Notes under the pieces: model-generated | What the model was told of the DNA's origin: nothing | Seen by the model: only the letters and a program-made list of their open reading frames with translations | The model's database searches: none | Translations under genes and position numbers: made by a program | In this document: in pieces, positions 27,540 through 62,783 of the stretch | Position numbering within the stretch: position 1 is the first letter of the stretch | Layout: the number at the start of each line of letters is the position of its first letter | Assembly (NCBI RefSeq): GCF_006345805.1 | Contig: NC_043024.1 | Span: forward strand, 11,842,001 to 11,906,000 | Direction of reading: 5' to 3' | DNA length: 64,000 bases | From: Octopus sinensis | Taxonomy: Eukaryota

Positions 27540-30500
27540 GCGCACATGATGGTCTCTCTCTTCGAAGGTTATGTCTGAGTGTGCAACTGTTTCCGAATGA
27601 CCTGCACAAATGTTTTGTTTATAATGATCGAATGTATGTCCCGTGCATCAAACCGCTTCCTTCATCAAATAACAAAAACCGATCTGTGCGTAATACGAAA
27701 TAAAATAGTGACTTTCTTTTGTATTTGACAATTTTCCGGAAAAAAAAGCAGTCAAAAAATCGATTCAAATGTCACGTATTTATGATTCTAAATATTAATA
27801 AATATCTCCTTATTTATCTTCATTTATGTAAATATCGTTTCCAGGTCTTCCAGCTTTCATTGTTATACTTACTTTGTCAATCAATTACACAAACAATTAT
27901 ACGAGGGTTGCTGAAGTGTAAGTATTTCTGTGTTTTATCCATCTCATTTTTCTCTGGTCTTCGCTACTAACACAATAAAACACCAACTTTCCATACAAAG
28001 AATGCCGTGACCTAAATTCTCAGACGTTTCCCAGACGCTCAACCTCCTATTCTCGTGCCGCACTAATGAAATTCTTATAACCCATACTGAGGTGTTTCAT
28101 AATGCCGCTGATATTTGAAACTCTCTTCACAGCAACAGTTTCTCGACAAATTAAACAAACTCATTTTCTTTGGTGCTTGGTGAAAAAGTAGTTGATTAAA
28201 ATTTCGGTGAAAAAGTAGTTGATTAAAATTTCGGTGAAAAGTAGTTGATTAAAATTTCGTGTGAAAAAGTAGTTGCATAAAATTCGGTGAAAAAGTAGTT
28301 GATTAAAATTTCGGTGAAAAAAAAGAGTTGATTAAAATTTCGGTGAAAAAGTAGTTGACTAAAATTTCGGTGAAAAAGTAGTTGATTATAATTTCGGAGA
28401 AAAAGTATTTGATTAAAATTTCTGTTTGATTGTGAAAAAGTATTTGATTAAAATTTCGGTGAAAAAGTAGTTGATTAAAACTTCGGTGAAAAAGAAGTTG
28501 ATTAAAATTTCGGTGAAAAAGTAGTTGATCAAAATTTCGGTGAAAAAGTAGTTGCATAAAATTTCGGTGAAAAAGTAGTTGATTAAAATTTCGGTGAAAA
28601 AGTAGTTGATTAAAATTTCGGAGAAAAAGTAGTTGATTAAAATTTCGGTGAAAAAGTAGTTGATTAAAATTTCGGTGAAAATGTAGTTGATTAAAATTTC
28701 GGTGAAAAAGAAGCTGATTAAAATTTCGGTGAAAAAGTAGTTGATTAAAATTTCGGTGAAAAAGTAGTTGATTAAAATTTCGGTGAAAAAGTAGTTGATT
28801 AAAATTTCGGAGAAAAAGTAGTTGATTAAAATTTCGGTGAAAAAGTAGTTGATTAAAATTTCGGAGAAAAAGTAGTTGATTAAAATTTCGGTGAAAAAGT
28901 AGTTGATTAAAATTTCGGTGAAAAAGTAGTTGATTAAAATTTCGGTGAAAAAGTAGTTGCATAAAATTTCGGTGAAAAAGTAGTTGATTAAAATTTTGGT
29001 GAAAAAGTAGTTGACTAAAATTTCGGTGAAAAAGTAGTTGATTAAAATTTCGGTGAAAAAGTAGTTGATTAAAATTTCGGTGAAAAAGTAGTTGATTAAA
29101 ATTTCGGTGAAAAAGTAGTTGATTAAAATTTCGGTGAAAAAGTAGTTGACTAAAATTTCGGTGAAAAAGTAGTTGATTATAATTTCGTTGAAAAAGTATT
29201 TGATTAAAATTTCGGTGAAAATGTAGTTGATTAAAATTTCGGTGAAAAAGAAGCTGATTAAAATTTCGGTGAAAAAGTAGTTGATTAAAATTTCGGTGAA
29301 AAAGTAGTTGATTAAAATTTCGTTGAAAAAGTAGTTGATTAAAATTTCGGTGAAAAAGTAGTTGCATAAAATTTCGGTGAAAAAGTAGTTGATTAAAATT
29401 TCGGTGAAAAAGTAGTTGATTAAAATTTCGGAGAAAAAGAAGTTGATTAAAATTTCGGTGAAAAAGTAGTTGATTAAAATTTCGGTGAAAAAGTAGTTGA
29501 TTAAAATTTCGGTGAAAAAGTAGTTGATTAAAATTTCGGTGAAAAAGTAGTTGCATAAAATTTCGGTGAAAAAGTAGTTGATTAAAATTTCGATGAAAAA
29601 GTAGTTGACTAAAATTTCGGTGAAAAAGTAGTTGATTAAAATTTCGGTGAAAAAGTAGTTGATTAAAATTTCGGTGAAAAAGTAGTTGATTAAAATTTCG
29701 GTGAAAAAGTAGTTGACTAAAATTTCGGTGAAAAAGTAGTTGATTATAATTTCGTTGAAAAAGTATTTGATTAAAATTTCGGTGAAAATGTAGTTGATTA
29801 AAATTTCGGTGAAAAAGAAGCTGATTAAAATTTCGGTGAAAAAGTAGTTGATTAAAATTTCGGAAAAAGAAAAAGAAATTTCGGTGAAAAAGTAGTTGAT
29901 TAAAATTTCGTTGAAAAAGTAGTTGATTAAAATTTCGGTGAAAAAGTAGTTGCATAAAATTTCGGTGAAAAATAGTTGATTAAAATTTCGGTGAAAAAGT
30001 ATTGATTAAAATTTCGGAGAAAAAGAAGTTGATTAAAATTTCGGTGAAAAAGTAGTTGACTAAAATTTCGGTTAAAAAGTAGTTGATTAAAATTTCGGTG
30101 AAAAAGTAGTTGATTAAAATTTCGGTGAAAAAGTAGTTGATTAAAATTTCGGTGAAAAATTAGTTGATTAAAATTTCGATGAAAAAGTAGTTGACTAAAA
30201 TTTCGGTGAAAAAGTAGTTGATTATAATTTCGGAGAAAAAGTATTTGATTAAAATTTCGGTGAAAAAGTAGTTGATTAAAACTTCGGTGAAAAAGAAGTT
30301 GATTAAAATTTCGGTGAAAAAGTAGTTGATTAAAATTTCGGTGAAAAAGTAGTTGCATAAAATTTCGGTGAAAAAGTAGTTGATTAAAATTTCGGTGAAA
30401 AAGTAGTTGATTAAAATTTTGGTGAAAAAGTAGTTGATTAAAATTTCGGAGAAAAAGTAGTTGATTAAAATTTCGGTGAAAAAGTAGTTGATTAAAATTT

Positions 30501-31584
30501 CGGTGAAAAAGTAGTTGATTAAAATTTCGGTGAAAAAGTAGTTGATTAAAATTTCGGTGAAAAAGTAGTTGATTAAAATTTCGTTGAAAAAGTAGTTGAT
30601 TAAAATTTCGGCACTCAAAATCCACTTAGCTTTTCTTGTTTTCCTTTTTTTGTTATTATTCAAGAGATGCAGGATCCTGGAATGGAAGGTGAAATGTATG
30701 AATAAGAATAAGTCAGAACAAAAGCAAACGTGATAATCCACTGAAGATGTATAGCAATGAATAACCATACAAATACATTATCGGAAGAGTTTCTCTACAT
30801 GGTCAGAGTGGCCACTTTGTTTCTCACGATGCCATTTCAATAAATAACAATAAGCAGCAATTATTGATCAACAGAACTTCTTACCGGTGATCGCCAAAAC
30901 ACAAGGTAAAGGTGATGGTAGACAATGTATGGATGTCAGAAGGCCTGCGCTGTACACGTGCCAAGCAGTAAGATTGAACCAAGAACTATGTGGTTGTGAA
31001 GCAACCTTCGTACCACACAGCTACAAGTATGGGGCCGTGTTTTCGTGTGGCTGGATATTGAAAGACATAATAAGAATATCTTAGATAACGATGTATATAA
31101 CATGTTGGAGCGAGGTCACTTGACCCTGTTATCTCCCCTACTATCGCTCTAGCGTCTAACGTCTGACCTCTAACGTTTGACCTCCGATCTCTGACTTCTC
31201 CTGAAATCAGAACGCCATGTTGGATCGTTAGCCCCTACACGCAATTTTTTCTCTCTCCTTGTTTCTTTTCTGTGTATCTTTCTGTCGAAGAGCGTAGGCT
31301 CGAAACGTAAAAGACTTGTTTTATTTCTATTCCTGAGCGCCATACTAATACATTTGTTTGTTTGTACTCCACCTGCCTTCGTCTTTTGTTTATTTTCATA
31401 AAGCTTCCCGTTATATATATATATACCTGTATATTACATAAGGCATATATATATATAACTGTATATTACATCTATATATATGTGTGTATGTATATCTGTA
31501 TATATATATAAATATATATTATATATAATATATATATATATTACATCTATATATATGTGTGTATGTATATCTGTATATATATAT

Positions 31585-31742: not shown

Positions 31743-33079
31743 CGCTAGCTTCTGCACGCATTTTTCTCTCTCCTTGTTTGTCTCCTTGTTTCTTTTCTGT
31801 GTATCTTTCTGTTGAAGAGCGTAGGCTCGAAACGTAAAAGACTTGTTTTATTTTTATTCCTGAGCGCCGTACTAATACATTTGCTTGTTTGTACTCCACC
31901 TGCCTTCGTCTTTTGTTTATTTTCATAAACCTACCTTCGTCTTTTGTTTATTTTCGTAAACCTTCCCGTTATATAACTCACTGCAAGTATGAGAATGTTA
32001 TCCCCTTTCCTTTTGGATCAAAATCACTTCACCTTAATCCCTCTGTGACACTTCAATTTATTGACTGAACTTTTGACAGATTTCCTTTAGTAATTGTCTT
32101 TCTATTTCTTTTGTAGCTGTTGGTTGTCCAAGACACCTTTCTATGCTGCTCTACTCACTCCCGTGGGTGCCATTCTTGCCTTTAACATTATCACATTCGT
32201 TTACGCTTTCGTGCGAATTGCTATGATGCAGAATTTCAACCACGCTTTGAAGAAAGCAAGAAAGGTACGCGTTTTGGGCGTCGTCGGTCTTTCCCTCCTT
32301 CTGGGTTTCACCTGGGTCATAGCATTCTTTTCTATTGATAAAGCGGCGGAAGTATTTCAATATCTCTTTGCTATCTTCAATACTCTTCAAGGAACGTTTA
32401 TCTTTATAATCTACTGTATATACAAGAAAGATACCAGAGATATCGTGAGCCAGTTTATACGTAATCAAAGGAAAAATTTGGCCAAGAAGAGAGAGGGTAA
32501 GTGCAATTTCGTCTTTCTTACTTACTCTTTCCACTCTTTACTCTTTTACATGTTTCACTCATGACCCCAGTGAGTAACTGGTACTTATTTAATCGACCCC
32601 GAAAGGATGAAAGGCAAAGTCGACCTCGGCGGAATTTGAACTCAGAACGTAAAGACAGACGAAATACCTATTTCTTTACTACCCACAAGAGGCTAAACAC
32701 AGAGAGGACAAACAAGGACAGACAAAGGGATTAGGTCGATTATATTGACTCCAGTGCGTAACTGGTACTTATTTAATCGACCCCGAAAGGATGAAAGGCA
32801 AAGTCGATCTCGGCGGAATTTGAACTCAGAACGTAACGGCAGCCAAAATACAACTATGCATTTCGCCCGGCGTGCTAACGTTTCTGCCAGCTCGCCGGTA
32901 ATGCTATCTTTTCATTTATAAGAAAAAAGTTACTGGCAATTTGGTTTACATAGGAATGCAATGTTTAAGATTGATTGTGCTTTTTCTCCAAAAGAATAAT
33001 ATTTTCTCTACTTTTTTCAGATACATATGATAACACGAGGACAGAAGGTGGAACAGCAGAAACGGTGTTGCAGAATTAA
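376..33079 (+). CDS. Adhesion GPCR (ADGRG2/G4/G6-like), 5'-partial; join(376-530,3001-3115,5195-5364,6645-6876,9958-10123,12721-12897,15290-15418,18234-18383,21150-21271,23539-23662,26648-26792,27845-27917,32117-32496,33021-33079)
   Basis: Manual splicing: all 13 introns GT..AG with compatible phases, 2197 nt, one open frame to TAA (about 731 aa). Domain order HRM, GAIN/GPS, 7TM is diagnostic of adhesion GPCRs. Exact orthology is not assignable without a search. Confidence 0.93.
583..1805 (+). mobile_element. SINE family B (tRNA head, Meta-domain-like core) with about 6.5 tandem ~183-bp modules
   Basis: One head (gcgagctggcagaatcgttagcacg) then repeats of tatttcgtctg...gagttcaaattcc...gtcgactctgcctttcatcctttcggggtcg...aaagaaatagg. 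Meta-domain resemblance is from recall. Confidence 0.85.
1870..2500 (-). mobile_element. RTE-clade LINE ORF2 fragment (pre-RT region), degenerate
   Basis: [17 protein letters not shown]...[18 protein letters not shown] and upstream LRQMKDKW...[11 protein letters not shown] motifs typical of RTE elements. Confidence 0.85.
2518..2900 (+). mobile_element. SINE family A1 (tRNA-derived), full length
   Basis: A box tggcccagtgg, B box ggtttcgattcc; 12-bp TSD actagtctgatt (2506-2517, 2901-2912). Confidence 0.9.
3001..3115 (+). CDS. aGPCR HRM domain exon, N-half ([37 protein letters not shown])
   Basis: Polypyrimidine/cag acceptor, GT donor; C..WP.T..G..ATLPC...ATR.C hormone-receptor motif. Confidence 0.9.
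3206..3911 (-). mobile_element. Non-autonomous Helitron (family H1), head-to-tail dimer 3206-3512 + 3513-3911
   Basis: Minus strand 5' TC, 3' CTAG preceded by a cccg..cggg hairpin; no TSD; CTAG abuts the TC of the next copy. Confidence 0.8.
4110..4340 (-). mobile_element. SINE family B monomer, variant tail
   Basis: Reverse complement of the B head and core. Confidence 0.8.
4559..4958 (+). mobile_element. Non-autonomous Helitron (family H2)
   Basis: A|TCtatatatata ... cccgagcaacagtggg..CTAG|T; homologous to 25326-26097. Confidence 0.78.
5195..5364 (+). CDS. aGPCR HRM domain exon, C-half (...[30 protein letters not shown]...)
   Basis: ttcag / gtgagt; W..PD.S.C motif; the split codon TG|T gives the conserved Cys. 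Confidence 0.9.
5438..5900. repeat. 22-bp minisatellite (caactacaagggggcccacctg), about 21 copies
   Basis: Direct periodicity; three units give the 22-aa repeat in ORFs 5369/5401/5700. Confidence 0.92.
6110..6582 (+). mobile_element. SINE family D (V-domain-like), tandem pair: 5'-truncated 6110-6327 and full 6328-6582
   Basis: tRNA head with B box gtttcgattcc; gctgcgatggactggcgtcccgtccagg...gaaaccggg resembles the V-SINE domain (recall). Confidence 0.7.
6645..6876 (+). CDS. aGPCR GAIN subdomain A exon (...[24 protein letters not shown])
   Basis: ttgcag / gtaaaa; matches ORF-track frame 6662..6880; helical GAIN-A-like sequence. Confidence 0.9.
6968..7100 (+). mobile_element. SINE family B, 3'-truncated
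   Basis: Head plus core, running into (TA)n(TG)n. Confidence 0.8.
7650..8551 (-). mobile_element. Composite SINE-A insertion (A1 7650-8030, (TA)n, A2 8230-8551)
   Basis: Flanked by tactatcctat on both sides; two identical heads with different tails. Confidence 0.8.
8745..9172 (-). mobile_element. SINE family C (CORE-like, internal TA/TG microsatellite)
   Basis: Reverse complement of ataggcgcaggagtggctgtgtgg...gggttcagtccc...cttgggcaagtg...gtaaaagag. Confidence 0.85.
9958..10123 (+). CDS. aGPCR GAIN exon ([40 protein letters not shown]...)
   Basis: ttacag / gtaaag; phase 2 in, phase 0 out; matches ORF 9962..10186. Confidence 0.9.
10396..10613. repeat. Near-perfect fold-back, ~100-bp arms, ~14-nt spacer
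   Basis: cacaatcaaggaatggcc...ccaggaga versus tctcctgg...ggccattccttgattgtg. Confidence 0.9.
10700..11160. repeat. (TA)n/(TACA)n compound microsatellite
   Basis: Visible; source of IYIY ORFs. Confidence 0.9.
11735..12115 (-). mobile_element. SINE family B, head + 2 modules
   Basis: Reverse complement with the same module junction (cctatttcttt). Confidence 0.8.
12203..12672. repeat. (TAG)n/(TTG)n trinucleotide tract, ~470 bp
   Basis: Visible; explains poly-T/L/V ORFs. Confidence 0.95.
12721..12897 (+). CDS. aGPCR GAIN exon (...YISLPKSIL...[16 protein letters not shown]...)
   Basis: Strong ttcccccag acceptor; ISLPKS and RIVF..M.DD.LY GAIN-B-like motifs; donor position uncertain (see findings). 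Confidence 0.82.
12961..13375 (+). mobile_element. SINE family B dimer with TSD
   Basis: ggtattttaaaaa at 12948-12960 and 13376-13388. Confidence 0.88.
13921..14440 (+). mobile_element. SINE family C with internal ~90-bp tandem duplication
   Basis: Head/CORE segment repeated at about 14040-14130; (gtaaaaga)n tail. Confidence 0.85.
14641..15024 (+). mobile_element. SINE family A1
   Basis: 12-bp TSD actattacatga (14629-14640, 15025-15036). Confidence 0.9.
15290..15418 (+). CDS. aGPCR GAIN exon ([43 protein letters not shown])
   Basis: ttgcag / gtaata; INS.IISASI...L.EPV.I.F GAIN motif. Confidence 0.93.
15440..15838 (-). mobile_element. SINE family C
   Basis: Reverse complement of the family consensus; begins about 20 nt after the exon donor. 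Confidence 0.85.
15990..17335. repeat. Old diverged ~305-bp tandem repeat (about 3 units) partly derived from the (TAA)n-tailed element, interrupted by a SINE
   Basis: Recurrent tattgagcagaatatttgctataacgatatttctgcttcagcaactcag near 16135, 16845 and 17150; part is the reverse complement of 19505-19670. Confidence 0.7.
16316..16707 (+). mobile_element. SINE family A1 with (CCAT)n tail
   Basis: 11-bp TSD taagaaataac (16305-16315, 16708-16718). Confidence 0.9.
17382..17776 (-). mobile_element. Helitron family H1
   Basis: CTAG/hairpin and TC ends; homologous to 3513-3911. Confidence 0.8.
17787..18165 (+). mobile_element. Chimeric SINE: family B 5' part fused to family C 3' half
   Basis: Switch at the shared tgtttgtcccc motif near 17980. 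Confidence 0.7.
18234..18383 (+). CDS. aGPCR GPS exon ([20 protein letters not shown]...[13 protein letters not shown])
   Basis: Canonical GPS C-x2-W...W-x3-GC...C-x-C-x-HL|T; ccag / gttggt. Confidence 0.97.
18622..19045 (+). mobile_element. SINE family C, full length
   Basis: Matches the family consensus seen in other copies. Confidence 0.87.
19402..20007 (+). mobile_element. ~570-bp non-coding retroelement 3' end embedded between (TAA)n tracts
   Basis: Flanked by (TAA)n on both sides; fragments recur on the minus strand at 16.0-17.2 kb. LINE 3'-UTR origin is inferred. Confidence 0.55.
20008..20560 (-). mobile_element. Putative non-autonomous Penelope-like element carrying a hammerhead; 3'-end fragments also at 52125-52240 and 58282-58430
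   Basis: Shared attaggg..aaacttacagggaaaaattagatttagg block in three places; hammerhead at its 5' end. PLE assignment is inference. Confidence 0.5.
20462..20552 (-). ncRNA. Type I hammerhead ribozyme motif
   Basis: Minus strand: ccuacg CUGAGGA G[60-nt stem II]C GAAAC GUAC GUC|cguagg; 6-bp stem I, full conserved core, palindromic stem III. Confidence 0.8.
21150..21271 (+). CDS. aGPCR TM1 exon ([27 protein letters not shown])
   Basis: ggcag / gtaagc; IS..GC.IS...L..T secretin/adhesion TM1 motif. Confidence 0.95.
21495..23370. repeat. Inverted (fold-back) ~21-bp minisatellite: G-rich arm 21495-22069, C-rich arm 22086-23370
   Basis: ggatgggggaagggtctgtca units, 146-bp higher-order period in the left arm; centre gatggtgtg-16nt-cacaccatc. 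Confidence 0.9.
23539..23662 (+). CDS. aGPCR TM2 exon ([22 protein letters not shown]...ICK)
   Basis: ttcag / gtaagt; hydrophobic helix; phases compatible. Confidence 0.95.
23718..24331 (-). mobile_element. SINE-A1 insertion carrying ~200 bp of flank copied from 7445-7650
   Basis: 11-bp TSD taagcacgagt (23707-23717, 24332-24342); flank nearly identical to the upstream locus. Confidence 0.85.
25326..26097 (-). mobile_element. Helitron family H2, head-to-tail dimer (25326-25708 + 25709-26097)
   Basis: Junction tatatagactagc = CTAG|TC on the minus strand. Confidence 0.8.
26099..26515 (-). mobile_element. Helitron family H3, 5' portion only
   Basis: Nearly identical to 40878-41321. Confidence 0.7.
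26648..26792 (+). CDS. aGPCR TM3-TM4 exon ([21 protein letters not shown]...LAWG)
   Basis: ttacag / gtatgt; A.LLHYF.L.SF.WM..EA family motif. Confidence 0.97.
27035..27440 (-). mobile_element. SINE family B dimer with TSD
   Basis: aaaactgaccatct on both sides. Confidence 0.85.
27845..27917 (+). CDS. aGPCR TM4/ECL2 exon ([25 protein letters not shown])
   Basis: ttccag / gtaagt; WG.PA motif spans the junction. Confidence 0.93.
27970..30660 (-). pseudogene. hAT (Buster/SPIN/GTF2IRD2-like) transposase N-terminal relic split by a satellite
   Basis: KK(S*)VDFECRNFN...[20 protein letters not shown](fs)RHYET...[15 protein letters not shown] matches the BED-finger N-terminus of this family (recall). 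Confidence 0.75.
28179..30611. repeat. 27-bp satellite (gaaaaagtagttgattaaaatttcggt), about 90 copies
   Basis: Direct periodicity; 27 nt = 9-aa repeat in the minus-strand ORFs. Confidence 0.97.
31240..31972 (+). mobile_element. Direct-repeat pair (31240-31410, 31755-31972) resembling Penelope pseudo-LTRs, each with a variant hammerhead, separated by a TA-rich array
   Basis: Near-identical ~170-bp repeats containing tcttt-ctgt(c/t)gaa-gagcgtaggctc-gaaacgta-aaaga. Confidence 0.55.
32117..32496 (+). CDS. aGPCR TM5-TM7 exon (CWLS...[10 protein letters not shown]...[14 protein letters not shown])
   Basis: ttgtag / gtaagt; CWL, LG.TW and FN.LQG..IF motifs; ORF 32094..32564. Confidence 0.97.
32560..32897 (-). 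mobile_element. SINE family B, head + ~1.6 modules
   Basis: Family sequence, same junction. Confidence 0.82.
33021..33079 (+). CDS. aGPCR last coding exon ([19 protein letters not shown])
   Basis: tttttttcag acceptor; phase 1 matches; ends TAA. Confidence 0.8.
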
Positions 33080-41415: not shown

Positions 41416-44400
41416 GAACTGTCCGGAGTGTTGCCATAGTAACGGAGCTAAATCAGGCAGAGTAAAGCCGCTCAGCACAGATTAACCTCGAACACTGCTG
41501 TGCATGTGCACGAAGTTTTAACGTTCTGGCTCACTTCCGGTATTTAAAGCAGTGCTTGGAAGAAAGGTGTGTAGCGTGTGATCATCGCATTGATCATGGT
41601 AAAGGTGAGTAGAGAATCTGCATCAATTTGTCAAAAGCTTGGTGATACCTGCTCAGAGGAGTGTGCGAGTGTTCAGACGTTTCCCAGAATGGCCGAGAAA
41701 TGTCGATATTGACGAAGGTTCTGGGAGACCCACAACCAGCAGGACAGAGCAAAACATCGCAGATGTGCGTGCAGCCGTGAAGGGGAAATCGTCGAATCCC
41801 CATCTGTGAGTTATCAGAGGTTGTGCAGGTTAGCTACGGTTCAGGTCAGTCCATTATCACTGAAGATTTCGGTGTGAGACGCGTGTCTGCCAAGTTTTTA
41901 AGCAGACTGCTTTCAGCTGACCAAAAATACACTCAGGATTCAATTGCCCAAAATCTCCTTCACTGTATCGAGAACGATGAGAACTTTTTGACAACGGCCA
42001 TAACAGGTGAGGAATCGTGGGTCTGTGGAAATGACCCCGAAACAAGGCTCGGTATTCGCAGTGGAAGACCCCAACCTGTCCGAGACCGAAGAAAGCGCGA
42101 ATAACTTGAAGCAATGTGAAGACACAAATAACTGCGGCGTTTACAGGATGCTATTCGTCGGAAAAGGCTATTCTGCGGAAAAGGCTATTCGGCGGAAAAG
42201 GCTATTCGTCGGAAGATGTTATTCGTCGGAAAATGCTATTCATCGGAAAAGGCTATTCGTCGGAAAAGGCGATTCGGCGGAAAAGGCTATTCGTCGGAAA
42301 AGGCTATTCGTCGGAAAAGGCTATTTGTCGGAAAAGGTTATTATTCGGAAAAGTCTATTCGTCGGAAAAGGCTATAGGTCGGAAAAGGCTATTCGTCGGA
42401 AAAGGCTATTCGTCGGAAAAGGCTATTTGTCGGAAAAGGTTATTATTCGGAAAAGGCTATTCGTCGGAAAAGGCTATAGGTCGGAAAAGGCTATTCGTCG
42501 GAAAAGGCTATTCGTCGGAAAATGTTATTCGTCGGAAAATGCTATTCATCGGAAAAGGCTATTCGTCGTAAAAGGCTATTCGTCGGAAAAGGCTATAGGT
42601 CGGGAAAAGCTATTCGTTGGAAAAGGCTATAGGTTGGAAAAGGCTATAGGTCGGAAAAGGCGATAGGTCGGAAAAGTCTATTCGTCGGAAAAGGCTATTC
42701 GGCGAAAAAGGCTATTCGGCGGAAAAGGCTATTCGTCGGAAAAGGCTATTTGTCGGAAAAGGTTATTATTCGGAAAATTCTATTCGTCGGAAAAGGCTAT
42801 TCGTCGGAAAAGTCTATTTGTCGGAAAAGGCTATTCGTCGGAAAGGCTATTTGTCGGAAAAGGTTATTATTCGGAAAAGTCTATTCGTCGGAAAAGGCTA
42901 TAGGTCGGAAAAGGCTATTCGTCGGAAAAGGCTATTCGTCTGAAAAGGCTATTTGTCGGAAAAGGTTATTATTCGGAAAAGGCTATTCGTCGGAAAAGGC
43001 TATAGGTCGGAAAATGTTATTCGTCGGAAAATGCTATTCATCGGAAAAGGCTATTCGTCGTAAAAGGCTATTCGTCGGAAAAGTCTATTCGACGGGAAAT
43101 GCTATTCGTCGGAAAAGGCTATAGGTCGGGAAAAGCTATTCGTTGGAAAAGGCTATAGGTTGGAAAAGGCTATAGGTCGGAAAAGGCGATAGGTCGGAAA
43201 AGTCTATTCGTCGGAAAAGGCTATTCGGCGAAAAAGGCTATTCGGCGGAAAAGGCTATTCGTCGGAAAAGGCTATTTGTCGGAAAAGGTTATTATTCGGA
43301 AAATTCTATTCGTCGGAAAAGGCTATTCGTCGGAAAAGTCTATTTGTCGGAAAAGGCTATTCGTCGGGAAAGGCTATTTGTCGGAAAAGGTTATTATTCG
43401 GAAAAGTCTATTCGTCGGAAAAGGCTATAGGTCGGAAAAGGCTATTCGTCGGAAAAGGCTATTCGTCTGAAAAGGCTATTTGTCGGAAAAGGTTATTATT
43501 CGGAAAAGGCTATTCGTCGGAAAAGGCTATTCGTCGGAAAATGTTATTCGTCGGAAAATGCTATTCATCGGAAAAGGCTATTCGTCGTAAAAGGCTATTC
43601 GTCGGAAAAGTCTATTCGTCGGGAAATGCTATTCGTCGGAAAAGGCTATAGGTCGGGAAAAGCTATTCGTTGGAAAAGGCTATAGGTTGGAAAAGGCTAT
43701 AGGTCGGAAAAGGCGATAGGTCGGAAAAGTCTATTCGTTGGAAAAGGCTATTCGGTGGAAAAGGCTATTTGTCGGAAAAGGTTATTATTCGGAAAAGTCT
43801 ATTCGTCGGAAAAGGCTATTCGTCGGAAAAGTCTATTTGTCGGAAAAGGCTATTCGTCGGAAAAGGCAATTCGTCGGAAAAGGCTATTCGTCGGAAAAGT
43901 CTATTCGTCGGAAAAGGCTATAGGTCGGGAAAAGCTATTCGTTGGAAAAGGCTATAGGTCGGAAAAGGCTATTCGGCGGAAAGACTATTCGTCGGAAAAG
44001 GCTATTCGGCGGAAAGACTATTCGTCGGAAAAGGCTATTCGTCGGAAAAGTCTATTCGTCGGAAAAGTCTATTCCTCGGAAAAGGCTATTCGTCGGAAAA
44101 GTCTATTCGTCAGAAAAGGCTATTCGTCGGAAAATGCTATTCGTGGGAAAAGATTATTATTCGGGAAAGTCTATTCGTCGGAAAAGGCTATTCGTCGGAA
44201 ACGGATGTAGGTCGGAAAAGGCTATTCGTCGGAAAAGGCTATTCGTCGGAAACGGATATAGGTCGGAAAAGGCTATTCGTCGGAAAAGGCTATTCGTCGG
44301 AAAAGGCAATTCCTCGGAAACGTCTATTCGGTGGAAAAGGCTATTCGTCGGAAACGGATATAGGTCGGAAAAGGCTGTTCGTCGGAAAAGGCTATTCGTC

Positions 44401-46790
44401 GGAAAAGGCTATTCGTCGGAAAAGGCTATTGGGCGGAAAGGCTATTCGTCTGAAAAGGCTATAGGTCGGAAAAGTCTATTAATCGGAAAAGGCTATTCGT
44501 CGGAAAAGGCTATAGGTCGGAAAAGGCTATTCGGCTGAAAGACTATTCGTCGGAAAAGGCTATTCGGCGGAAAGACTATTCGTCATAAAAAGGCTATAGG
44601 TCGGAAAAGGCTATTCGGCGGAAAAGGCTATTCGTCGGAAAAGAATATTCGTCGGAAAAGGCTATTCGTCGGAAAAGGCAATTCGTCGGAAAAGGCTATT
44701 CGTCGGAAAAGGTTATTCGTCGGCAAAGGCAATTCGTCGGAAAATGCTATAGGTCGCAAAAGGCTATTCGTCGGAAAAGGCAATTCGTCGGAAAATGCTA
44801 TTCATCGGAAAAGGCTATTCATCGGAAAAGGCTATTCGTCGGAAAAGTCTATTCGTCGGAAAAGGTTATTCGTCGGAAAAGTTTATTCATCGGAAAAGGC
44901 TATTCGTCGGAAAAGGCTATTCGTCGGAAAAGGCTATAGGTCGGAAAAGGCTATTCGTCGGAAAAGGCTATTCGTCGCAAAATGTTATTATTCGGAAAAG
45001 TCTATTCGTCGGAAAAGCCTATTCGTCGGAAAAGGTTGGGAATGGCTATTCGTTGGAAAAGGCTATAGGTCGGAAAAGGCTATAGGTCGGAAAAGGCTAT
45101 TCGGCGGAAAAGGCTATTCGTCGGAAAAGGCTATTCGTCGGAAAAGGCTATTTGTCGGAAAAGGTTATTATTCGGAAAAGTCTATTCGTCGGAAAAGGCT
45201 ATTCGTCGGAAAAGTCTATTCGTCGGAAAAGGCTATTCGTCGGAAAAGGCTATAGGTTGGAAAAGGCTATAGGTCGGAAAAGTCTATTCGTAGGAAAAAG
45301 CTATTCGTCGGAAAAGGCTATTCGTCGGAAAAGGCTATTTGTCGGAAAAGGTTATTATTCGGAAAAGTCTATTCGTCGGAAAAGGCTATTCGTCGGAAAA
45401 GTCTATTCGTCGGAAAAGGCTATTCGTCGGAAAGACTATTCGTCGGAAAAGGCTATTCGTCGGAAAAGGCAATTCGGTGGAAAAGGCTATTCGTCGGAAA
45501 AGGCTATAGGTCGGGAAAGGCTATTCGTTGGAAAAGGCTATAGGTCGGAAAAGGCATTAGGTCGGGAAAGGCTATTCGTTGGAAAAGGCTATAGGTCGGA
45601 AAAGGCATTAGGTCGGAAAAGTCTATTCGTAGGAAAAAGCTATTCGTCGGAAAAGGCTATTCGTCGGAAAAGTCTCTTCGTCGGAAAAGGCTATTCGTCG
45701 GAAAGACTATTCGTCGGAAAAGGCTATTCGTCGGAAAAGGCAATTCGGTGGAAAAGGCTATTCGTCGGAAAAGGCTATAGGTCGGGAAAGGCTATTCGTT
45801 GGAAAAGGCTATAGGTCGGAAAAGGCATTAGGACGGAAAAGTCTATTCGTCGGAAAAGGCTATTCGCCCGAAAAGGCTATTCGTCTGGAAAAGGCTATAG
45901 GTCGGAAACGCTAGTCTATTCGTCGGAAAAGGCTATTTGTCGGAAAAGGTTATTATTCGGAAAAGTTTATTCGTCGGAAAAGGCTATTCGTCGGAAAAGG
46001 CTATTCGTCGGAAAAGGCTATTTGTCGGAAAAGGTTATTATTCGGAAAAGGCTATAGGTCGGAAAAGGCTATTCGTCGGAAAAGTCTATTCGTCGGAAAA
46101 GGCTATTCGTCGGAAAAGGCTATAGGTCGGAAAAGGCTATAGGTCGGAAAAGTCTATTCGTCGGAAAAGGCTATTCGTCGGAAAAGGCTATTCGTCAGAA
46201 AAGTCTATTCGTCGGAAAAGGCTATTCGTCGGAAAAGGCTATAGGTCGGAAAAGGCTATAGGTCGGAAAAGTCTATTCGTCGGAAAAGGCTATTCGTCGG
46301 AAAAGGCTATTCGTCAGAAATGTCTATTCGTCGGAAAAGGCTATTCGTCGGAAAAGGCTATAGGTCGGGAAAGGCTATTCGTTGGAAAAGGCTATAGGTC
46401 GGAAAAGGCATTAGGTCGGAAAAGTCTATTTGTTGGAAAAGGTTATTCGCCCGAAAAGGCTATTCGTCTGGAAAAGGCTATAGGTCGGAAAACGCTATTC
46501 GTCGGAAAAAGCTATTCGTCGGAAATAGGCTACAGTTGCATGCATCCGTTGAGTGGCAATTGCACCATGACAACGCACCTGCCGATTCAGCGCAGCTTGT
46601 GCAGCAGTTTTTGGCTAGGCATAGCATTCCCCATGTTCGACATCCACCGTATTCCCCAGATCTCGCCCTTCGAGAATTTTTCCTTTTTCCAAAAATCAAA
46701 TCTGGCTTCAAATGAAGATTTCAGGACGTCGAGGAAATCTGATTATCACAGGAACCCCGTGCTGCTAAAACAAATATCATAAAGTACTGA
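41416..46790 (+). pseudogene. Mariner (DD34D) transposase relic split by a 4.4-kb minisatellite
   Basis: RICI..CQKLG, GRPTTSRT, RRVSAKF..RLL, GEESW..DPET, PRPKKAR, LRRLQDAIRRKR | array | WQLHHDNAPA..HPPYSPDLA...FFLFPKIK; stops and frameshifts. Confidence 0.9.
42150..46528. repeat. 17-bp minisatellite (gctattcgtcggaaaag), about 258 copies, with higher-order blocks
   Basis: Direct periodicity; three units = the 17-aa AIRRKRLFVGKGYSSEK repeat in the ORF track. Confidence 0.97.
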
Positions 46791-47780: not shown

Positions 47781-48200
47781 AGAGAGAAAAAAGGAGGGAA
47801 AAAAGGAGAGAAAAAGGAGAGAGAAAAAAGGAGAGAAAAAAGGAGAGAAAAGAGGAGAGAAAAGAGGAGAGAAAAAAGAGAGAAAAAAGGAGAGAAAAAA
47901 GAGAAAGGAGAGAAAAAGAGAGAAAAAAGGGAGAAAAAAAGGGAGAAAAAGGAGAGAAAAAAAGGCGAGAGAAAAAAGGGAGAAAAAGGAGAGAGAAAAA
48001 AGGAGAGAGAAAAAGGAGAGAAAAAATGAGAGAAAAAAAGGAATTTGAACTCCTATTTCTTTACTACCCACAAGGGGGCTAAACACAGAGGGGACAAACA
48101 AGGAGAGTAAAAAGGAGAGAGAAAAAGGAGAGAAAAAAGGAGAGAGAAAAAAGGAGAGAAAAAAGTAGAGAAAAAAGGAGAGAGAAAAAAGGAGAGAAAG
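47781..48200. repeat. Homopurine tract, (GAGAAAAAAG)n-like, interrupted by a SINE-B fragment
   Basis: Almost only A/G over about 270 + 95 bp. Confidence 0.9.
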
Positions 48201-48949: not shown

Positions 48950-50622
48950 CTATTTTTATTTCTTTATTGCCCACAAGAGGCTAAACATAGAGGGGACAAA
49001 CAAGGACAGACAAACGGATTAAGTCGATTACATCGACCCCAGTGCGTAACAGGGAACTTAATTTATCGATCCCGAAAGGATGAAAGGCAAAGTCGACCTC
49101 GGAGGAATTTGAACTCAGAACGTAGCAGCTGACGAAATACCTATTTCTTTACTACCCACAAGGGGCTACACACAGAGGGGACAAACAAGGACAGACAAAG
49201 TGATTAAATCGATTACATCGATGCCAGTGCGTAACTGGTACTTAATTTATCGATCCCGAAAGGATGAAAGGCAAAGTCGACCTCGGCGGAATTTGAACTC
49301 AGAACGTAGCGGCATACGAAATACCTATTTCTTTACCACCCACAACCGGCTAAACATAGAGGGGAAAAACAAGGACAGATAAAGGGACTAAGTCGATTAT
49401 ATCGACCCTGTGCGTAACAGGGAACTTAATTTATCGACCCCGAAAGGATGAAGGGCAAAGTCAACCTCGGAGGAATTTGAACTCAGAACGTAAAGACAGA
49501 CGAAATACCTATTTCTTTACTACCCACAAGGGGCTAAACACAGAGAGGACAAATAAGGACAGGCAAACGGATTAAGTCGATTATATCGATTCAGTGCGTA
49601 ACTGGTACTTAATTTACCGACCCCGAAAGGATGAAAGGCAAAGTCGACCTCGGCGGAATTTGAACTCAGAACGCAACGGTAGACGAAATACCTATTTCTT
49701 TACTACCCACAAGGGGCTAAACATAGAGAGGAAAAACAAGGACAGACAAAGGGATTAATTCGATTACATCGATGCCAGCGCGTAACTGGTACTTAATTTA
49801 TCGACACCGAAAGGATGAAAGGCAAAGTCGACCTCGGAGGTATTTTGAACTCAGAACGTAGCGGCAGACGAAATACCTATTTCTTTACTACCACAAGGGG
49901 CTAAACATAGAGAGGAAAAACAAGGACAGACAAAGGGATTAATTCGATTACATCGATGCCAGCGCGTAACTGGTACTTAATTTATCGACACCGAAAGGAT
50001 GAAAGGCAAAGTCGACCTCGGAGGTATTTTGAACTCAGAACGTAGCGGCAGACGAAATACCTATTTCTTTACTACCCACAAGGGGCTAAACGTAGAGAGG
50101 ACAAACAAGGACAGACAAATGGATTAAGTCGATTACATCGATGCCAGTGCGTAACTGGTACTTAATTTATCGATCCCGAAAGGATGAAAGGCAAAGTCGA
50201 CCTCGGCGGAATTTGAACTCAGAACGTAGAGACAGACGAAATACCTATCTCTTTACTACACACAAGGGGCTAAACACAGAGAGAACAAACAAGGACAGAC
50301 AATAGGATTAAATCGATTACATCGATGCCAGTGCGTAACAGGGAACTTAATTTATCGATCCCGAAAGGATGAAAGGCAAAGTCGACCTCGGCGGAATTTG
50401 AACTCAGAACGCAACGGTAGACGAAAATACCTATTTCTTTACTACCCACAAGGGGCTAAACACAGAGAGGACAACCAAGGACAGACCAAGGGATTAGGTC
50501 GATTAAATCTACCCCAGTGCGTAACTGGTACTTAATTTATCGACCCCGAAAGGATGAAAGGCCATGTCGACCTCGGAGGAATTTGAACTCAGAACGTAGC
50601 GGCAGACGAAATACCTATTTCT
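48950..50622 (-). repeat. Headless tandem array of 9 SINE-B modules (~184 bp)
   Basis: Junction cctatttct near 49140, 49325, 49508, 49690, 49876, 50060, 50243, 50430, 50613. Confidence 0.92.
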
Positions 50623-55877: not shown

Positions 55878-57455
55878 GGGGAGGAAGCACTCCGTCGGTT
55901 ACGACGACGAGGGTTCCGGTTGATCCGAATCAACGGAACAGCCTGCTCGTGAAATTAACGTGTAAGTGGCTGAGCACTCCACAGACACGTGTACCCTTAA
56001 CGTAGTTCTCGGGGATATTCAGCGTGACACAGAGAGTGGACAAGGCCGGCCCTTTGAAATACAGGCACAACAGAAACAGGAAGTAAGAGTGAGAGAAAGT
56101 TGTGGTGAAAGAGTACAGCAGGGATCACCACCATCCCCTGCCGGAGCCTCGTGGAGCTTTAGGTGTTTTAGCTCAATATGGAAGCATTCCGTCGGTTACG
56201 ACGACGAGGGTCCCGGTTGATCCGATCAACGGAACAGCCTGCTCGTGAAATTAACGTGTAAGTGGCTGAGCACTCCACAGACACGTGTACCCTTAACGTA
56301 GTTCTCAGGGATATTCAGCGTGACACAGAGAGTGACAAGGCCGGCCCGTTAGAAATACAGGTACAACAGAAACAGGAAGTAAGAGTGAGAGAAAGTTGTG
56401 GTGAAAGAGTACAGCAGGGATCACCACCATCTCCTGCCGGAGCCTCGTGGAGCTTTAGGTGTTTTAGCTCAATATGGAAGCATTCCGTCGGTTACGACGA
56501 CGAGGGTCCCGGTTGATCCGATCAACGGAACAGCCTGCTCGTGAAATTAACGTGTAAGTGGCTGAGCACTCCACAGACACGTGTACCCTTAACGTAGTTC
56601 TCAGGGATATTCAGCGTGACACAGAGAGTGACAAGGCCGGCCCGTTAGAAATACAGGTACAACAGAAACAGGAAGTAAGAGTGAGAGAAAGTTGTGGTGA
56701 AAGAGTACAGCAGGGATCACCACCATCCCCTGCCGGAGCCTCGTGGAGCTTTTTTGGTGTTTTAGCTCAATATGGAAGCATTCCGTCGGTTACGACGACG
56801 AGGGTCCCGGTTGATCCGATCAACGGAACAGCCTGCTCGTGAAATTAACGTGTAAGTGGCTGAGCACTCCATAGACACGTGTACCCTTAACGTAGTTCTC
56901 AGGGATATTCAGCGTGACACAGAGAGTGACAAGGCCGGCCCGTTAGAAATACAGGTACAACAGAAACAGGAAGTAAGAGTGAGAGAAAGTTGTGGTGAAA
57001 GAGTACAGCAGGGATCACCACCATCCCCTGCCGGAGCCTCGTGGAGCTTTAGGTGTTTTAGCTCAATATGGAAGCATTCCGTCGGTTACGACGACGAGGG
57101 TCCCGGTTGATCCGATCAACGGAACAGCCTGCTCGTGAAATTAACGTGTAAGTGGCTGAGCACTCCACAGACACGTGTACCCTTAATGTAGTTCTCGGGG
57201 ATATTCAGCGTGACACAGAGAGTGACAAGGCCGGCCCGTTAGAAATACAGGTACAACAGAAACAGGAAGTAAGAGTGAGAGAAAATTGTGATGAAAGAGT
57301 ACAGCAGGGATCACCACCATCCCCTGCCGGAGCCTTTTGGAGCTTTTTTGGTGTTTTCGCTCAATAAACACTCACAACGCCCGGTCTGGGAATCGAAACC
57401 GCGATCCTATGACCGCGAGTCCGCTGCCCTAACCACTGGGCCATTGCGCCTCCAC
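55878..57455 (-). mobile_element. SINE-A1 multimer: one head + five 296-bp bodies
   Basis: ORF-track period 296/296/298/296; 13-bp TSD taaatgcaagtta (55865-55877, 57456-57468). Confidence 0.92.
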
Positions 57456-58808: not shown

Positions 58809-60959
58809 CACGCGTTCTCAACCATTTTTTAATCTATGGACCCCTTTCATTACTATTTTATTCTGATGGACCTCCCTTAGACATTCGATGTTGAAAAACT
58901 AGTTTTATAGAAATTTTTTTCAGAATTCCTGTTTTGTTTTCCCCACATGAACTTGAGTCGGTTGGTCGATGTAAAAATGTCAGATAAAGAAACCCAACTG
59001 TTTCCTGCAATGCATAACAATACATACATCCAAATCAGGGGTTCTCAGCCATTTCATATCTACAGACCCCTTTATTTACTATTTCATTCTGGTGGGCATA
59101 TCATATCCATTCAATATTTGAAATCTAGTTTTATAGAAACTTCTTTCAAATCCCCTGTTTTGTTTCCCCCGCATGAACTTGAGTCGGTTGAACGATGTAA
59201 AAATGTCAGTTAAAGGAACCCAGCTGTTTCCTGCAATGCATATCAATACATACATCCAAATCAGGGGTTCTCAGCCATTTCATATCTACAGACCCCTTTA
59301 TTTACTATTTCATTCTGGTGGGCATATCATATCCATTCAATATTTGAAATCTAGTTTTATAGAAACTTCTTTCAAATCCCCTGTTTTGTTTCCCCCGCAT
59401 GAACTTGAGTCGGTTGATCGATGTAAAATGTCAGATAAAGAAACCCAACTGTTTCTTGCTACACATACCAATACATACATCCAAATCAGGGGTTCTCAGC
59501 CATTTCATACCTACAGACCCCTTTATTTACTATTTCATTCTGGTGGGCATATCATATCCATTCGATATTTGAAATCTAGTTTTATAGAAACTTCTTTTAA
59601 ATCCCCTGTTTTGTTTTCTCCGCATGAACTTGTGTCGGTTGATCGATGTAAAATGTTAGAGAAAGAAACCCAACTGTTTCTTGCAACACATACCAATACA
59701 TACATCCAAATCAGGGGTTCTCAGCCATTTCATATCTACAGACCCCTTTATTTACTATTTCATTCTGGTGGACATATCATATCCATTCAATATTTGAAAT
59801 CTAGTTTTATAGAAACTTCTTTCAAATCCCCTGTTTTGTTTTCCCCGCATGAACTTGTGTCGGTTGAACGATGTAAAATGTCAGATAAAGAAACCCAGCT
59901 GTTTCTTGCAACGCATACCAATACATACATCCAAATCAGGGGTTCTCAGCCATTTCATATCTACAGACCCCTTTATTTACTATTTCATTCTGGTGGACAT
60001 ATCATATCCATTCAATATTTGAAATCTAGTTTTATAGAAACTTCTTTCAAATCCCCTGTTTTGTTTTCCCCGCATGAACTTGTGTCGGTTGAACGATTGT
60101 AAATGTCAGATAAAGAAACCCAGCTGTTTCTTGCAACGCATACCAATACATACATCCAAATCAGGGGTTCTCAGCCATTTCATATCTACAGACCCCTTTA
60201 TTTACTATTCATTCTGGTGGACATATCATATCCATTCAATATTTGAATCTAGTTTTATAGAAACTTCTTTCAAATCCCCTGTTTTGTTTTCCCCGCATGA
60301 ACTTGTGTCGGTTGAACGATGTAAAATGTCAGATAAAGAAACCCAGCTGTTTCTTGCAACGCATACCAATACATACATCCAAATCAGGGGTTCTCAGCCA
60401 TTTCATATCTACAGACCCCTTTATTTACTATTTCATTCTGGTGGACATATCATATCCATTCAATATTTGAAATCTAGTTTTATAGAAACTTCTTTCAAAT
60501 CCCCTGTTTTGTTTTCCCCGCATGAACTTGTGTCGGTTGAACGATGTAAAATGTCAGATAAAGAAACCCAGCTGTTTCTTGCAACGCATACCAATACATA
60601 CATCCAAATCAGGGGTTCTCAGCCATTTCATATCTACAGACCCCTTTATTTACTATTTCATTCTGGTGGACATATCATATCCATTCAATATTTGAAATCT
60701 AGTTTTATAGAAACTTCTTTCAAATCCCCTGTTTTGTTTTCCCCGCATGAACTTGTGTCGGTCGATCGATGTAAAAATGTCAGAGAAAGGAACCCAGCTG
60801 TTTCTTGCACTGCATACCAATACATACATCTAAAGAGAGATTTTTTCAGGGGCCCTTAAAATACTATTGTGGATCCTCAATTTGCTATATTGTTGTGTGA
60901 ACCCCAAAAATCTTATATGGACCTTGAGGAACCATTTGGACCCCAGCTGAGAACCACCG
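58809..60959 (+). repeat. ~225-bp tandem array (about 9 copies) inside a hAT-type MITE
   Basis: Marker atgaacttg at 58947, 59173, 59399, 59624, 59849, 60074, 60297, 60522, 60747; each unit has caggggttctca; inverted end gctgagaaccaccg at about 60946-60959. Confidence 0.85.
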
Positions 60960-61222: not shown

Positions 61223-61624
61223 CCTATTTCTTTACTACCCACAAGGGGCTAAACACAGAGGGGACAAACAAGGACAGACAAACGGATTAAGTCGATTACA
61301 TCAACTCCAGTGCGTAACTGGTACTTATTTAATCGACCTTGAAAGGATGAAAGGCAAAGTCGACCTCGGCAGAATTTGAACTCAGAACGTAGCGGCAGAC
61401 GAAATACCTATTTCTTTACCACCTACCAGGGGCTAAACACAGAGGAGACAAACAAGGACAGACAAACGGATTAAGTCGATTATATCAACCCCAGTGCGTA
61501 ACTGGTACTTAATTTATCGACCCCGAAAGGATGAAAGGCAAGTCGACCTCGGCGGAATTTGAACTCAGAACGTAACGGCAGACGAAAAACTGCTAAGCAT
61601 TTCGCCCGGCGTGCTAACGTTTAT
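61223..61624 (-). mobile_element. SINE family B dimer with 19-bp TSD
   Basis: taaatgaaataatatagtc at 61204-61222 and 61625-61643. Confidence 0.88.
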
Positions 61625-62191: not shown

Positions 62192-62783
62192 TATTTCTTT
62201 ACTGCCCACAAGGGGCTAAACATAGAGGGGACAAACGAGGGCAGACAAACGGATTAAGTCGATTATATCGACCCCAGTGCGTAACTGGTACTTAATTTAT
62301 CGACCCCGAAAGGATGAAAAGCAAAGTCGACCTCGGCGGAATTTGAGCTCAGAACGTAGCGGCAGACGAAATACCTATTTCTATTTCTTTACTGCCCACA
62401 AGGGGGTACACACAGAGGGGACAAACAAGAACAGACAAACGGATTAAGTTGATTATATCGACCCCAGTGCGTAACTGGTACTTAATTTATCGACCCCGAA
62501 AGGATGAAAGGCAAAGACGACCTCGGCGGAATTTGAGCTCAGAACGTAGCGGCAGACGAAATGCCTATTTCTTTGCTAAACACAGAGAGGACAAACAAGG
62601 ACAGGCAAACGGATTAAGTCGATTAAATCGACCCCGGTGCGTAACTGGTACTTATTTAATCGACCCCGAAAGGATGAAAGGCAAAGTCGACCTCGGCGGA
62701 ATTTGAACTCGGAACGTAACGGCACACGAAATACGACTACGCATTTCGCCCGGCGTGCTAACGGTTCTGCCAGCTCGCCGCCT
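62192..62783 (-). mobile_element. SINE family B trimer with TSD
   Basis: ccaccagaattct on both sides; head + 3 modules. Confidence 0.87.

What the first reader, a model, noticed from the sequence alone, without database searches (positions are those of the whole stretch)
42150..46528. A 4.4-kb minisatellite born from six codons of a mariner transposase
Seen: the array starts exactly at ...LRRLQD-AIRRKR and the transposase resumes right after it (LQLHASVEWQLHHDNAPA). The 17-bp unit gctattcgtcggaaaag is the coding sequence for AIRRKR. Collapsing the array gives gct att cgt cgg aaa agg cta cag, with GCTA repeated 17 bp apart, a ready slippage seed. Known: mariners usually read RRKRP here. Inference: a Pro>Leu codon change created the microhomology, and one duplication expanded to about 258 copies. 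This is an unusually clear birth record of a satellite.
Basis: partly seen in the sequence, partly recalled or inferred. Interest (0 to 1): 0.8.

Follow-up and report, generated by a model that had tools for sequence, protein, structure and literature searches.

The report
Minisatellite grown inside a dead mariner
A 17-base piece of a decayed mariner transposase gene was copied about 258 times where it sat, making a 4.4-kb array found nowhere else in this 2.7-Gb genome; it is a very clean example of a process that is already well known.

Summary
Window 42150-46532 holds 258 tandem copies of a 17-bp unit, GCTATTCGTCGGAAAAG, with 84% matches. The array sits inside a degraded mariner copy at 41422-46739.

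- At least 87 other copies of this mariner family carry the 17-mer once, at the same position. Nearly all are followed by GCCACA, which reads RRKR-PQ. None is followed by GCTACA.
- A dimer of the unit, and a 601-bp piece of the array, match nothing in the genome outside this array.

With the array collapsed, the locus lines up with family copies as a single alignment. The C>T change (Pro>Leu) at 46531 is private to this copy: 0 of 30 aligned copies and 0 of 87 junctions share it. Whether it came before the expansion or was copied out of the array afterwards cannot be told from one genome.

The array did not grow one unit at a time only. It contains a 31-unit (527 bp) higher-order repeat, about 3.4 copies at 95% identity, and several smaller multi-unit duplications.

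Minisatellites derived from transposable elements are well documented (PMC9659126), so this is a new member of a known kind, of modest interest.

The parts
41422..42125 (+). 5' part of a degraded mariner copy: untranslated leader, N-terminal DNA-binding region and the first catalytic-Asp region. It has several stops and frameshifts, and the first ~21 bp of the family's 5' inverted repeat are missing.
   Evidence: More than 50 genomic relatives at 73-83% identity begin at window 41422. Family copies continue ~21 bp further upstream to TA|CGTGGTCTGATCAATAAGTA. The three frame translations show the stops.
42126..42132 (+). Breakpoint of a deletion of about 86 bp, seen in none of the sampled copies, lying 17-24 bp upstream of the array.
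   Evidence: Family copies have 94-97 bp between the positions that align to 42125 and 42133; the window has 7. None of the sampled copies shares the deletion.
42133..42149 (+). Transposase segment (R)RLQD directly upstream of the array, continuous with the family sequence.
   Evidence: A single alignment runs 42133 -> one unit -> 46739 in more than 25 family copies.
42150..46532 (+). The 17-bp minisatellite: 258 units plus the partial unit GCTA. Its consensus is identical to the commonest state of the 17-mer among the family junctions.
   Evidence: It is unique in the 2.72-Gb assembly.
42151..43917 (+). Zone of a 31-unit (527 bp) higher-order repeat, about 3.4 copies. Adjacent copies are 95.4% identical; copies 1 and 3 are 92.4% identical.
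   Evidence: Self-BLAST of the array. Unit-variant map: 34 of 38 units identical at a lag of 31 units. The genome DNA search gives 97% identity at a 526-bp offset.
46529..46532 (+). Terminal partial unit GCTA. The T at 46531 is a private C>T (Pro>Leu; the family reads GCCA) that lengthens the boundary microhomology from GC to GCTA.
   Evidence: 0 of 30 aligned copies and 0 of 87 junction matches have GCTA here.
46533..46739 (+). 3' part of the mariner relic, holding the second and third catalytic positions (HHDNAP...PPYSPDL). The third Asp reads Glu in this copy. Homology to the family stops at 46739, and the last ~215 bp, including the 3' inverted repeat, are absent.
   Evidence: At least 40 relatives at 80-89% identity over 46533-46739. 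Local alignment ends at 46739. No 3' inverted repeat was found anywhere in the window. Weak DDE_3, Mos1 and SETMAR matches.

Best explanation
A copy of an old, abundant mariner family inserted here and decayed. It lost both ends, about 86 bp internally, and its reading frame.

Inside the dead copy, the 17 bp that once coded for AIRRK(R) were duplicated in tandem. The likely cause is a replication-slippage or template-switch event between short direct repeats 17 bp apart: GC..GC in the ancestral sequence, GCTA..GCTA in this copy. Once two or more units existed, the array grew by further slippage and by unequal exchange between misaligned units. Point variants arose along the way, and blocks of 7, 11, 16 and 31 units were re-duplicated, giving 258 units (4.4 kb).

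Shown here: origin in place, uniqueness of the locus, the private C>T, and the higher-order structure. Inferred: the molecular mechanism, the order of the C>T relative to the first duplication, and the absence of function. I regard the array as a neutral by-product.
For: 1. At least 87 family copies carry the 17-mer once at this position, followed by GCCACA(A/G)TTGCATG (alignment).
2. The collapsed locus aligns to more than 25 copies as one uninterrupted alignment, 42133 -> 46739, with no extra bases and no target-site duplication.
3. The dimer pattern with up to 2 mismatches gives 97 hits, all inside C28:11884150-11888356. A CpG-tolerant dimer pattern gives 184 forward and 0 reverse hits, although family copies lie on both strands (41 forward, 46 reverse). 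A 601-bp array query hits only the array.
4. The family is mariner. Pfam PF01359 scores 47.1 bits against a cut-off of 24. Mos1 transposase (3hos) is the best solved structure at E=1.9e-14. Family copies show TA-flanked inverted repeats and D-34-D spacing.
5. The array consensus equals the commonest family state of the 17-mer.
6. A nested duplication pattern is present: a 527-bp higher-order repeat at 95.4% identity, against 86-88% identity for other long off-register self-alignments.
7. The T at 46531 is shared by 0 of 30 and 0 of 87 copies.
Against: - Only one genome is available, so the timing of the C>T, the age of the array and the order of the duplications are not observed directly.
- The array length rests on one assembly, and no reads could be checked.
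- No strand-structure signal favouring slippage was found (DNA folding z-scores from -1.45 to +1.1).
- The listing shows only the first 100 of the 184 forward hits. All 100 lie in the array.
Confidence: 0.9

Rival explanations
1. One reading: the C>T (Pro>Leu) happened first, lengthened the microhomology from 2 to 4 bp, and thereby caused the first duplication.
For: The only copy with GCTA at this site, out of at least 88, is also the only copy with an array. The chance that this particular site carries this particular change by coincidence is low. The copy differs from the family majority at 8.2% of sites.
Against: The same association is predicted if the T was copied from the array into the flank after expansion, for example by a slipped strand ending ...GGCTA re-priming on ...GGCCA, or by mismatch repair in misaligned heteroduplex DNA. 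The ancestral GC..GC microhomology may have been enough. No unit or flank feature in this genome orders the two events.
Confidence: 0.4
2. One double-strand-break repair event made both the ~86-bp deletion and the first tandem duplication. An example would be interrupted gap repair with template switching, the process that makes internally deleted DNA transposons. The array then grew as in the best explanation.
For: The deletion breakpoint (42125/42133) lies only 17-24 bp from the array start. The deletion is seen in none of the sampled copies, and the array is unique to this copy.
Against: Proximity is the only evidence. No filler DNA or clear microhomology is seen at the deletion junction. 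Old copies carry many independent deletions: this copy also lacks about 24 bp just after 46739, and other copies show other gaps.
Confidence: 0.15
3. Assembly artefact: the array is real but far shorter, or its length and higher-order pattern were produced by long-read mis-assembly.
For: Nine units show a 1-bp loss in the A-run, and a few have small indels, which could be long-read errors. No reads were available.
Against: There are 72 unit variants arranged in consistent multi-unit patterns. The diverged (95%, 92%) higher-order copies look like evolved sequence, not a collapsed or stuttered consensus.
Confidence: 0.04
4. The array was made elsewhere and inserted or recombined into the mariner copy.
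For: GCTA on both sides could be read as a 4-bp target duplication.
Against: No other locus carries the array. The unit is the family's own sequence at exactly this position. No foreign bases lie at either boundary.
Confidence: 0.01

Closest known systems
Minisatellites derived from transposable elements. [quoted passage not shown]
   Same: A short internal segment of a dispersed element is amplified in tandem inside one copy. The flanks remain recognisable element sequence, and the array is locus-specific.
   Different: Here the donor is the coding region of a DNA transposon (mariner) in an invertebrate genome. The family sequence holds only one unit, with no pre-existing two-unit 'proto-repeat'. 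A private base change lengthens the boundary microhomology.
Satellites derived from coding parts of LINE elements (PROsat and Pvc20 from L1 ORF2; chicken HinfI/SCR1 from CR1), as tabulated in PMC9659126.
   Same: Tandem arrays whose monomer is a piece of a transposable-element open reading frame.
   Different: Those are multi-locus, high-copy satellite families with monomers of hundreds of bp. This is a single 4.4-kb locus with a 17-bp unit.
Tandem arrays associated with Tc1/mariner elements (Bari1 clusters in Drosophila melanogaster; miDNA4 in a Xenopus Tc1/mariner MITE; Mboumar inside an ant satellite), from PMC9659126. Also Tetris in Drosophila virilis (PMC4079207).
   Same: A link between a DNA transposon and tandem repeats.
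   Different: In Bari1 the whole element is the repeat unit. In miDNA4 and Tetris the repeats are part of the mobile element and travel with it. In the ant case the mariner lies inside the satellite. Here a 17-bp coding fragment expanded in one immobile, truncated copy and did not spread.
Mos1 / Hsmar1 (SETMAR) mariner transposases.
   Same: The family's transposase aligns to Mos1 (E=1.9e-14) and SETMAR. It has the D,D34D spacing, the (R/Q)RKRP motif before the second catalytic Asp, and TA-flanked inverted repeats.
   Different: All copies inspected are old, about 10% from the family majority, with stops. The window copy is truncated at both ends, and its third catalytic Asp reads Glu.

Membership tests
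mariner family of Tc1/mariner DNA transposons | Transposase homologous to Mos1 (Pfam Transposase_1, PF01359) | tested here: met
   Family copies: PF01359 at 47.1 and 28.1 bits against a cut-off of 24. Mos1 3hos E=1.9e-14 and SETMAR E=1.9e-11. The window copy's own fragments give only weak matches: DDE_3 E=0.001 and Mos1 E=0.004. Its membership therefore rests on 73-89% DNA identity to the family.
mariner family of Tc1/mariner DNA transposons | D,D34D catalytic spacing | tested here: met
   Counted by eye on the L044 translation printed: HHDNAP ... CDFF, with 34 residues between the two Asp. In the window copy the third position reads E (LREFF), which fits a dead copy.
mariner family of Tc1/mariner DNA transposons | Terminal inverted repeats of about 30 bp flanked by a TA target duplication | tested here: met
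   Family copies start TA|CGTGGTCTGATCAATAAGTATCCGGAC and end with the reverse complement followed by TA. This is not met in the window copy itself: its 5' repeat lacks ~21 bp and its 3' repeat is absent.
minisatellite | Unit of roughly 10-100 bp repeated head to tail over 0.5-30 kb | tested here: met
   17 bp x 258 = 4.38 kb.
minisatellite derived from a transposable element | The unit maps to one position of the element, and the array is bounded on both sides by colinear element sequence | tested here: met
satellite DNA family | Many loci or long arrays making up a notable genome fraction | tested here: not met
   There is one locus in 2.72 Gb, and 4.4 kb is about 0.00016% of the genome.
hypervariable minisatellite | Length polymorphism between individuals | not testable with these tools
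   Only one assembly is available, and no reads.

The most novel reading that the evidence does not exclude
The locus is a natural experiment on what starts a minisatellite. Among at least 88 copies of the same 17-mer context in one genome, the single copy whose flank mutated from GCCA to GCTA (microhomology 2 -> 4 bp) is the only one that ever duplicated. On this reading, one base change in a dead transposon was the trigger.
Probability: 0.35. Interest if true: 0.45.

Novelty: new member of a known kind. Interest (0 to 1): 0.3.

Why it matters
The birth of a tandem array is rarely seen with both the 'before' state and the 'after' state in one genome. Here the 'before' state is dozens of unexpanded sister copies, and the 'after' state is a single expanded copy.

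That makes the locus a good teaching case. It is also a possible test bed for how much boundary microhomology matters, and for how higher-order repeats build up.

It does not change what is known. Tandem repeats derived from transposable elements are common, and this window alone holds many other arrays, several built from a SINE-like repeat.

Tried and rejected
- **Inserted-array hypothesis:** rejected. There is no second locus and no foreign bases at the boundaries.
- **Hairpin or slipped-strand propensity of the unit:** DNA folding of 2-3 units on both strands, and of the left junction, is no better than shuffles (z from -1.45 to +1.1). No support.
- **Array as coding sequence:** the consensus unit has no stop in any + frame, so open frames reach 242 aa. 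A 241-aa array translation found no relative among 5.8 billion proteins. Rejected.
- **Pfam and PDB on the window copy's own fragments:** the 5' pieces gave nothing, and the 3' piece gave only weak DDE_3, retroviral-integrase and Mos1 matches. Family copies had to be used instead.
- **Search for the missing 3' inverted repeat in the window:** none found with up to 3 mismatches.
- **Edge-versus-centre divergence gradient in the array:** none seen, 7-10% throughout.
- **Ungapped lag autocorrelation for higher-order periods:** blurred by indels. Replaced by unit-by-unit parsing.
- **Organism identity:** literature search did not confirm the assembly statistics I recall.
- **Consensus sequences:** no full-length consensus of the transposon was built or printed. 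Column majorities were used only inside a script, to count differences over 245 bp.
Full report
**1. What is there**

Tandem Repeats Finder reports one array at 42150-46532: period 17, 258.2 copies, 84% matches, 1% indels, consensus GCTATTCGTCGGAAAAG.
- Upstream, the frame reads ...LRRLQD, then AIRRK from the first unit.
- Downstream, after a terminal partial unit GCTA, it reads LQLHASVEWQLHHDNAPADSAQ...PPYSPDL.

The DNA added relative to a single unit is 4362 bp. That happens to be a multiple of three, but every frame through the array is interrupted by stops.

**2. The flanks are a dead mariner**

The window is G000:C28:11842001-11906000, in a 2.72-Gb eukaryotic assembly.
- The left flank (41416-42149) has more than 50 relatives at 73-83% identity.
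- The right flank (46533-46790) has at least 40 relatives at 80-89% identity, over its first 207 bases.

Longer open stretches from family copies identify the family as mariner:
- They hit Pfam Transposase_1 (PF01359) at 47.1 and 28.1 bits against a cut-off of 24.
- Their best solved structure is Mos1 transposase (3hos, E=1.9e-14), followed by SETMAR.
- Family copies begin TA|CGTGGTCTGATCAATAAGTATCCGGAC and end with the inverted complement plus TA.
- They show 34 residues between the second and third catalytic Asp (L044 translation).

The window copy is a relic:
- Homology starts at 41422, about 21 bp inside the 5' inverted repeat, and stops at 46739. The last ~215 bp, including the 3' repeat, are missing.
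- It has several stops and frameshifts.
- It has a deletion of about 86 bp between 42125 and 42133 that none of the sampled copies shares.
- Its third catalytic position reads Glu.

**3.

*Do uninterrupted family members have the 17-mer here?* Yes. A pattern made of the unit followed by GCNACARTTGCATG, with up to 3 mismatches, finds 87 places on both strands (41 forward, 46 reverse).
- In almost all of them the variable base is C, giving GCCACA, which reads RRKR-PQ.
- None reads GCTACA.
- By my count of that listing, about 13 of the 87 keep the exact 17-mer. Many of the others differ at its two CpG sites.
- Direct alignment of plus-strand copies shows ...GGGAT|unit|GCCACA(A/G)TTGCATG.
- With the array collapsed to one unit, more than 25 copies align from 42133 straight through to 46739 in a single alignment.
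- Mos1 aligns QRKRPEY at the same place, so 'RRKRP' is indeed the conserved reading.

*Does the array occur elsewhere?* No.
- The 34-bp dimer with up to 2 mismatches gives 97 hits, all listed, all within C28:11884150-11888356, and none on the reverse strand.
- A version tolerant of CpG decay, with 3 mismatches, gives 184 forward and 0 reverse hits. The 100 that are listed all lie in the array.
- A 601-bp piece of the array used as a DNA query matches only the array.

So no other family copy shows even a two-unit duplication at this site.

**4. The C>T at 46531**

The family reads GCCA after the unit; the window reads GCTA.
- In an alignment of 30 distinct copies, 0 share the T.
- Overall the window differs from the column majority at 20 of 245 sites (8.2%). 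The family median is 9.8%.

The change is therefore private, and unlikely to sit at this exact site by coincidence (roughly 5-10%). Two readings predict it equally well:
- (a) It came first and lengthened the direct repeat from GC to GCTA.
- (b) It was copied from the array into the flank after expansion, by slipped re-priming or heteroduplex repair at the array's end.

Nothing in this single genome orders the events. No unit carries C at unit position 3, but neither model predicts one. I put (a) and (b) at about 0.4 each and coincidence at about 0.2.

**5. How the array grew**

Parsing the array unit by unit gives 258 units:
- 61 are exact consensus, and there are 72 variants.
- The main variants are TCTATTCG... 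(24 units), GCTATAGG... (24), GCTATTTG... (13) and GTTATTATT... (12).
- Mean divergence from the consensus is 8.7% per site, with no gradient from edge to centre.

The variants are not scattered at random.
- Positions 42151-43917 form a 31-unit (527 bp) higher-order repeat of about 3.4 copies.
- Adjacent copies are 95.4% identical over 1241 bp. Copies 1 and 3 are 92.4% identical. Other long off-register self-alignments run at about 86-88%.
- 34 of 38 units are identical at a lag of 31 units.
- Smaller duplications occur at lags of 16, 11 and 7 units, near 45.1-45.7 kb and 46.1-46.3 kb.

This is the usual signature of unequal exchange acting on blocks, on top of unit-level slippage. 'One duplication expanded' is therefore too simple.

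As rough relative dating, higher-order copies differ by 4.6%, or about 2.3% per copy, against 8.2% for the relic's flank versus the family majority. The last block amplification is therefore old, but clearly younger than the insertion. This is an inference that assumes equal rates.

**6. Mechanism and function**

The most likely sequence of events is:
1. A microhomology-mediated 17-bp tandem duplication inside an already inactive copy.
2. Growth by slippage and unequal sister-chromatid or allelic exchange.

The unit has no notable single-strand structure. A translation of the array has no protein relatives. By construction the array is CpG-dense, with 399 CpG and an observed/expected ratio of 2.1, against 0.88 for the rest of the window. 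I found no sign of function and treat it as a neutral by-product.

The ~86-bp deletion 17-24 bp upstream raises the possibility that one repair event made both lesions. Proximity is the only evidence for that.

**7. Comparison with what is known**

Tandem repeats derived from transposable elements are well reviewed.
- PMC9659126 lists about 7,276 human minisatellites derived from transposable elements, satellites derived from L1 ORF2, and Tc1/mariner-associated arrays (Bari1 clusters, miDNA4).
- PMC4079207 describes Tetris.
- PMC12628747 and PMC7004042, seen only as titles and abstracts in the search results, treat the same theme.

This locus belongs to that kind. It fails the test for a satellite family, because it is a single locus.

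Its particular merits are cleanliness:
- a one-unit ancestral state documented by dozens of sister copies;
- exact colinearity across the collapsed array;
- uniqueness in the genome;
- a private base change at the boundary.

Context lowers the surprise further. The same 64-kb window holds many other arrays, including several built from a 184-bp SINE-like repeat.

**8. Verdict**

Origin in place is strongly supported (0.9). The causal role of the Pro>Leu change is open. Novelty: a new member of a known kind. Interest is about 0.3.

Noticed in passing
window 632-1807, 13009-13382, 48957-50622, 61223-61587, 62192-62734: Five tandem arrays with a 184-bp (or 367-369-bp dimer) unit. The unit looks like a SINE-like dispersed repeat (...GGGGTCGATAAATTAAGTACCAGTT...GGGGTCGATGTAATCGACTTAA...). 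The same repeat appears as single copies in flanks of unrelated loci such as L050. Arrays made from dispersed repeats seem common in this genome.
   Followed up: no
window 28179-30611: A 27-bp x 90 array (92% matches). It lies between two open stretches that match the secretin-family 7TM receptor domain (PF00002): 26456-26941 (profile 78-127) and 32094-32564 (profile 148-250), both on the + strand. It is therefore probably inside an intron of a GPCR gene. The mariner and its array lie about 9 kb downstream of the last detected exon.
   Followed up: partly
G000:C11444:2702-3513, C17:17201062-17201894, C7:77525480-77526283, C7:21485279-21486121, C20:15048808-15049630 (loci L028-L030, L019): A derivative of the same mariner family in which the first ~240 bp are present twice, head to head, about 10 bp apart, next to a copy ending near family position 580. 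This is a foldback-like or long-inverted-repeat deletion derivative, present at several loci.
   Followed up: no
one search list: C1:40994809, C1:41211669, C1:206481341, C9066:100148, C9483:61788, C9494:65944; also C8:98203331 and C8:98204570: Groups of mariner copies share identical junction variants: six with ...CATTGG...GTTGGATG, and two copies 1.2 kb apart on C8. This suggests segmental duplication, uncollapsed haplotigs, or a younger sub-lineage.
   Followed up: no
window 42150-46532: The array is a CpG-dense block, with 399 CpG and an observed/expected ratio of 2.1, against 0.88 in the rest of the window. In dispersed copies many of the changes to the same 17-mer fall at its two CpG sites.
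   Followed up: partly
window 5439-5902, 21500-23364, 55883-57366, 58814-60834, 47782-48199: Further arrays with units of 22, 21 (146), 296, 225 and 12 bp. By my rough sum of the rows, about a quarter of the window is tandem repeat.
   Followed up: no
whole genome G000: The assembly size (2,719,151,902 bp, 13,516 contigs) and the length of C10 (105,892,736 bp) match my recollection of the published Octopus sinensis assembly (2,719 Mb, scaffold N50 105.89 Mb). This was not confirmed with the tools.
   Followed up: partly
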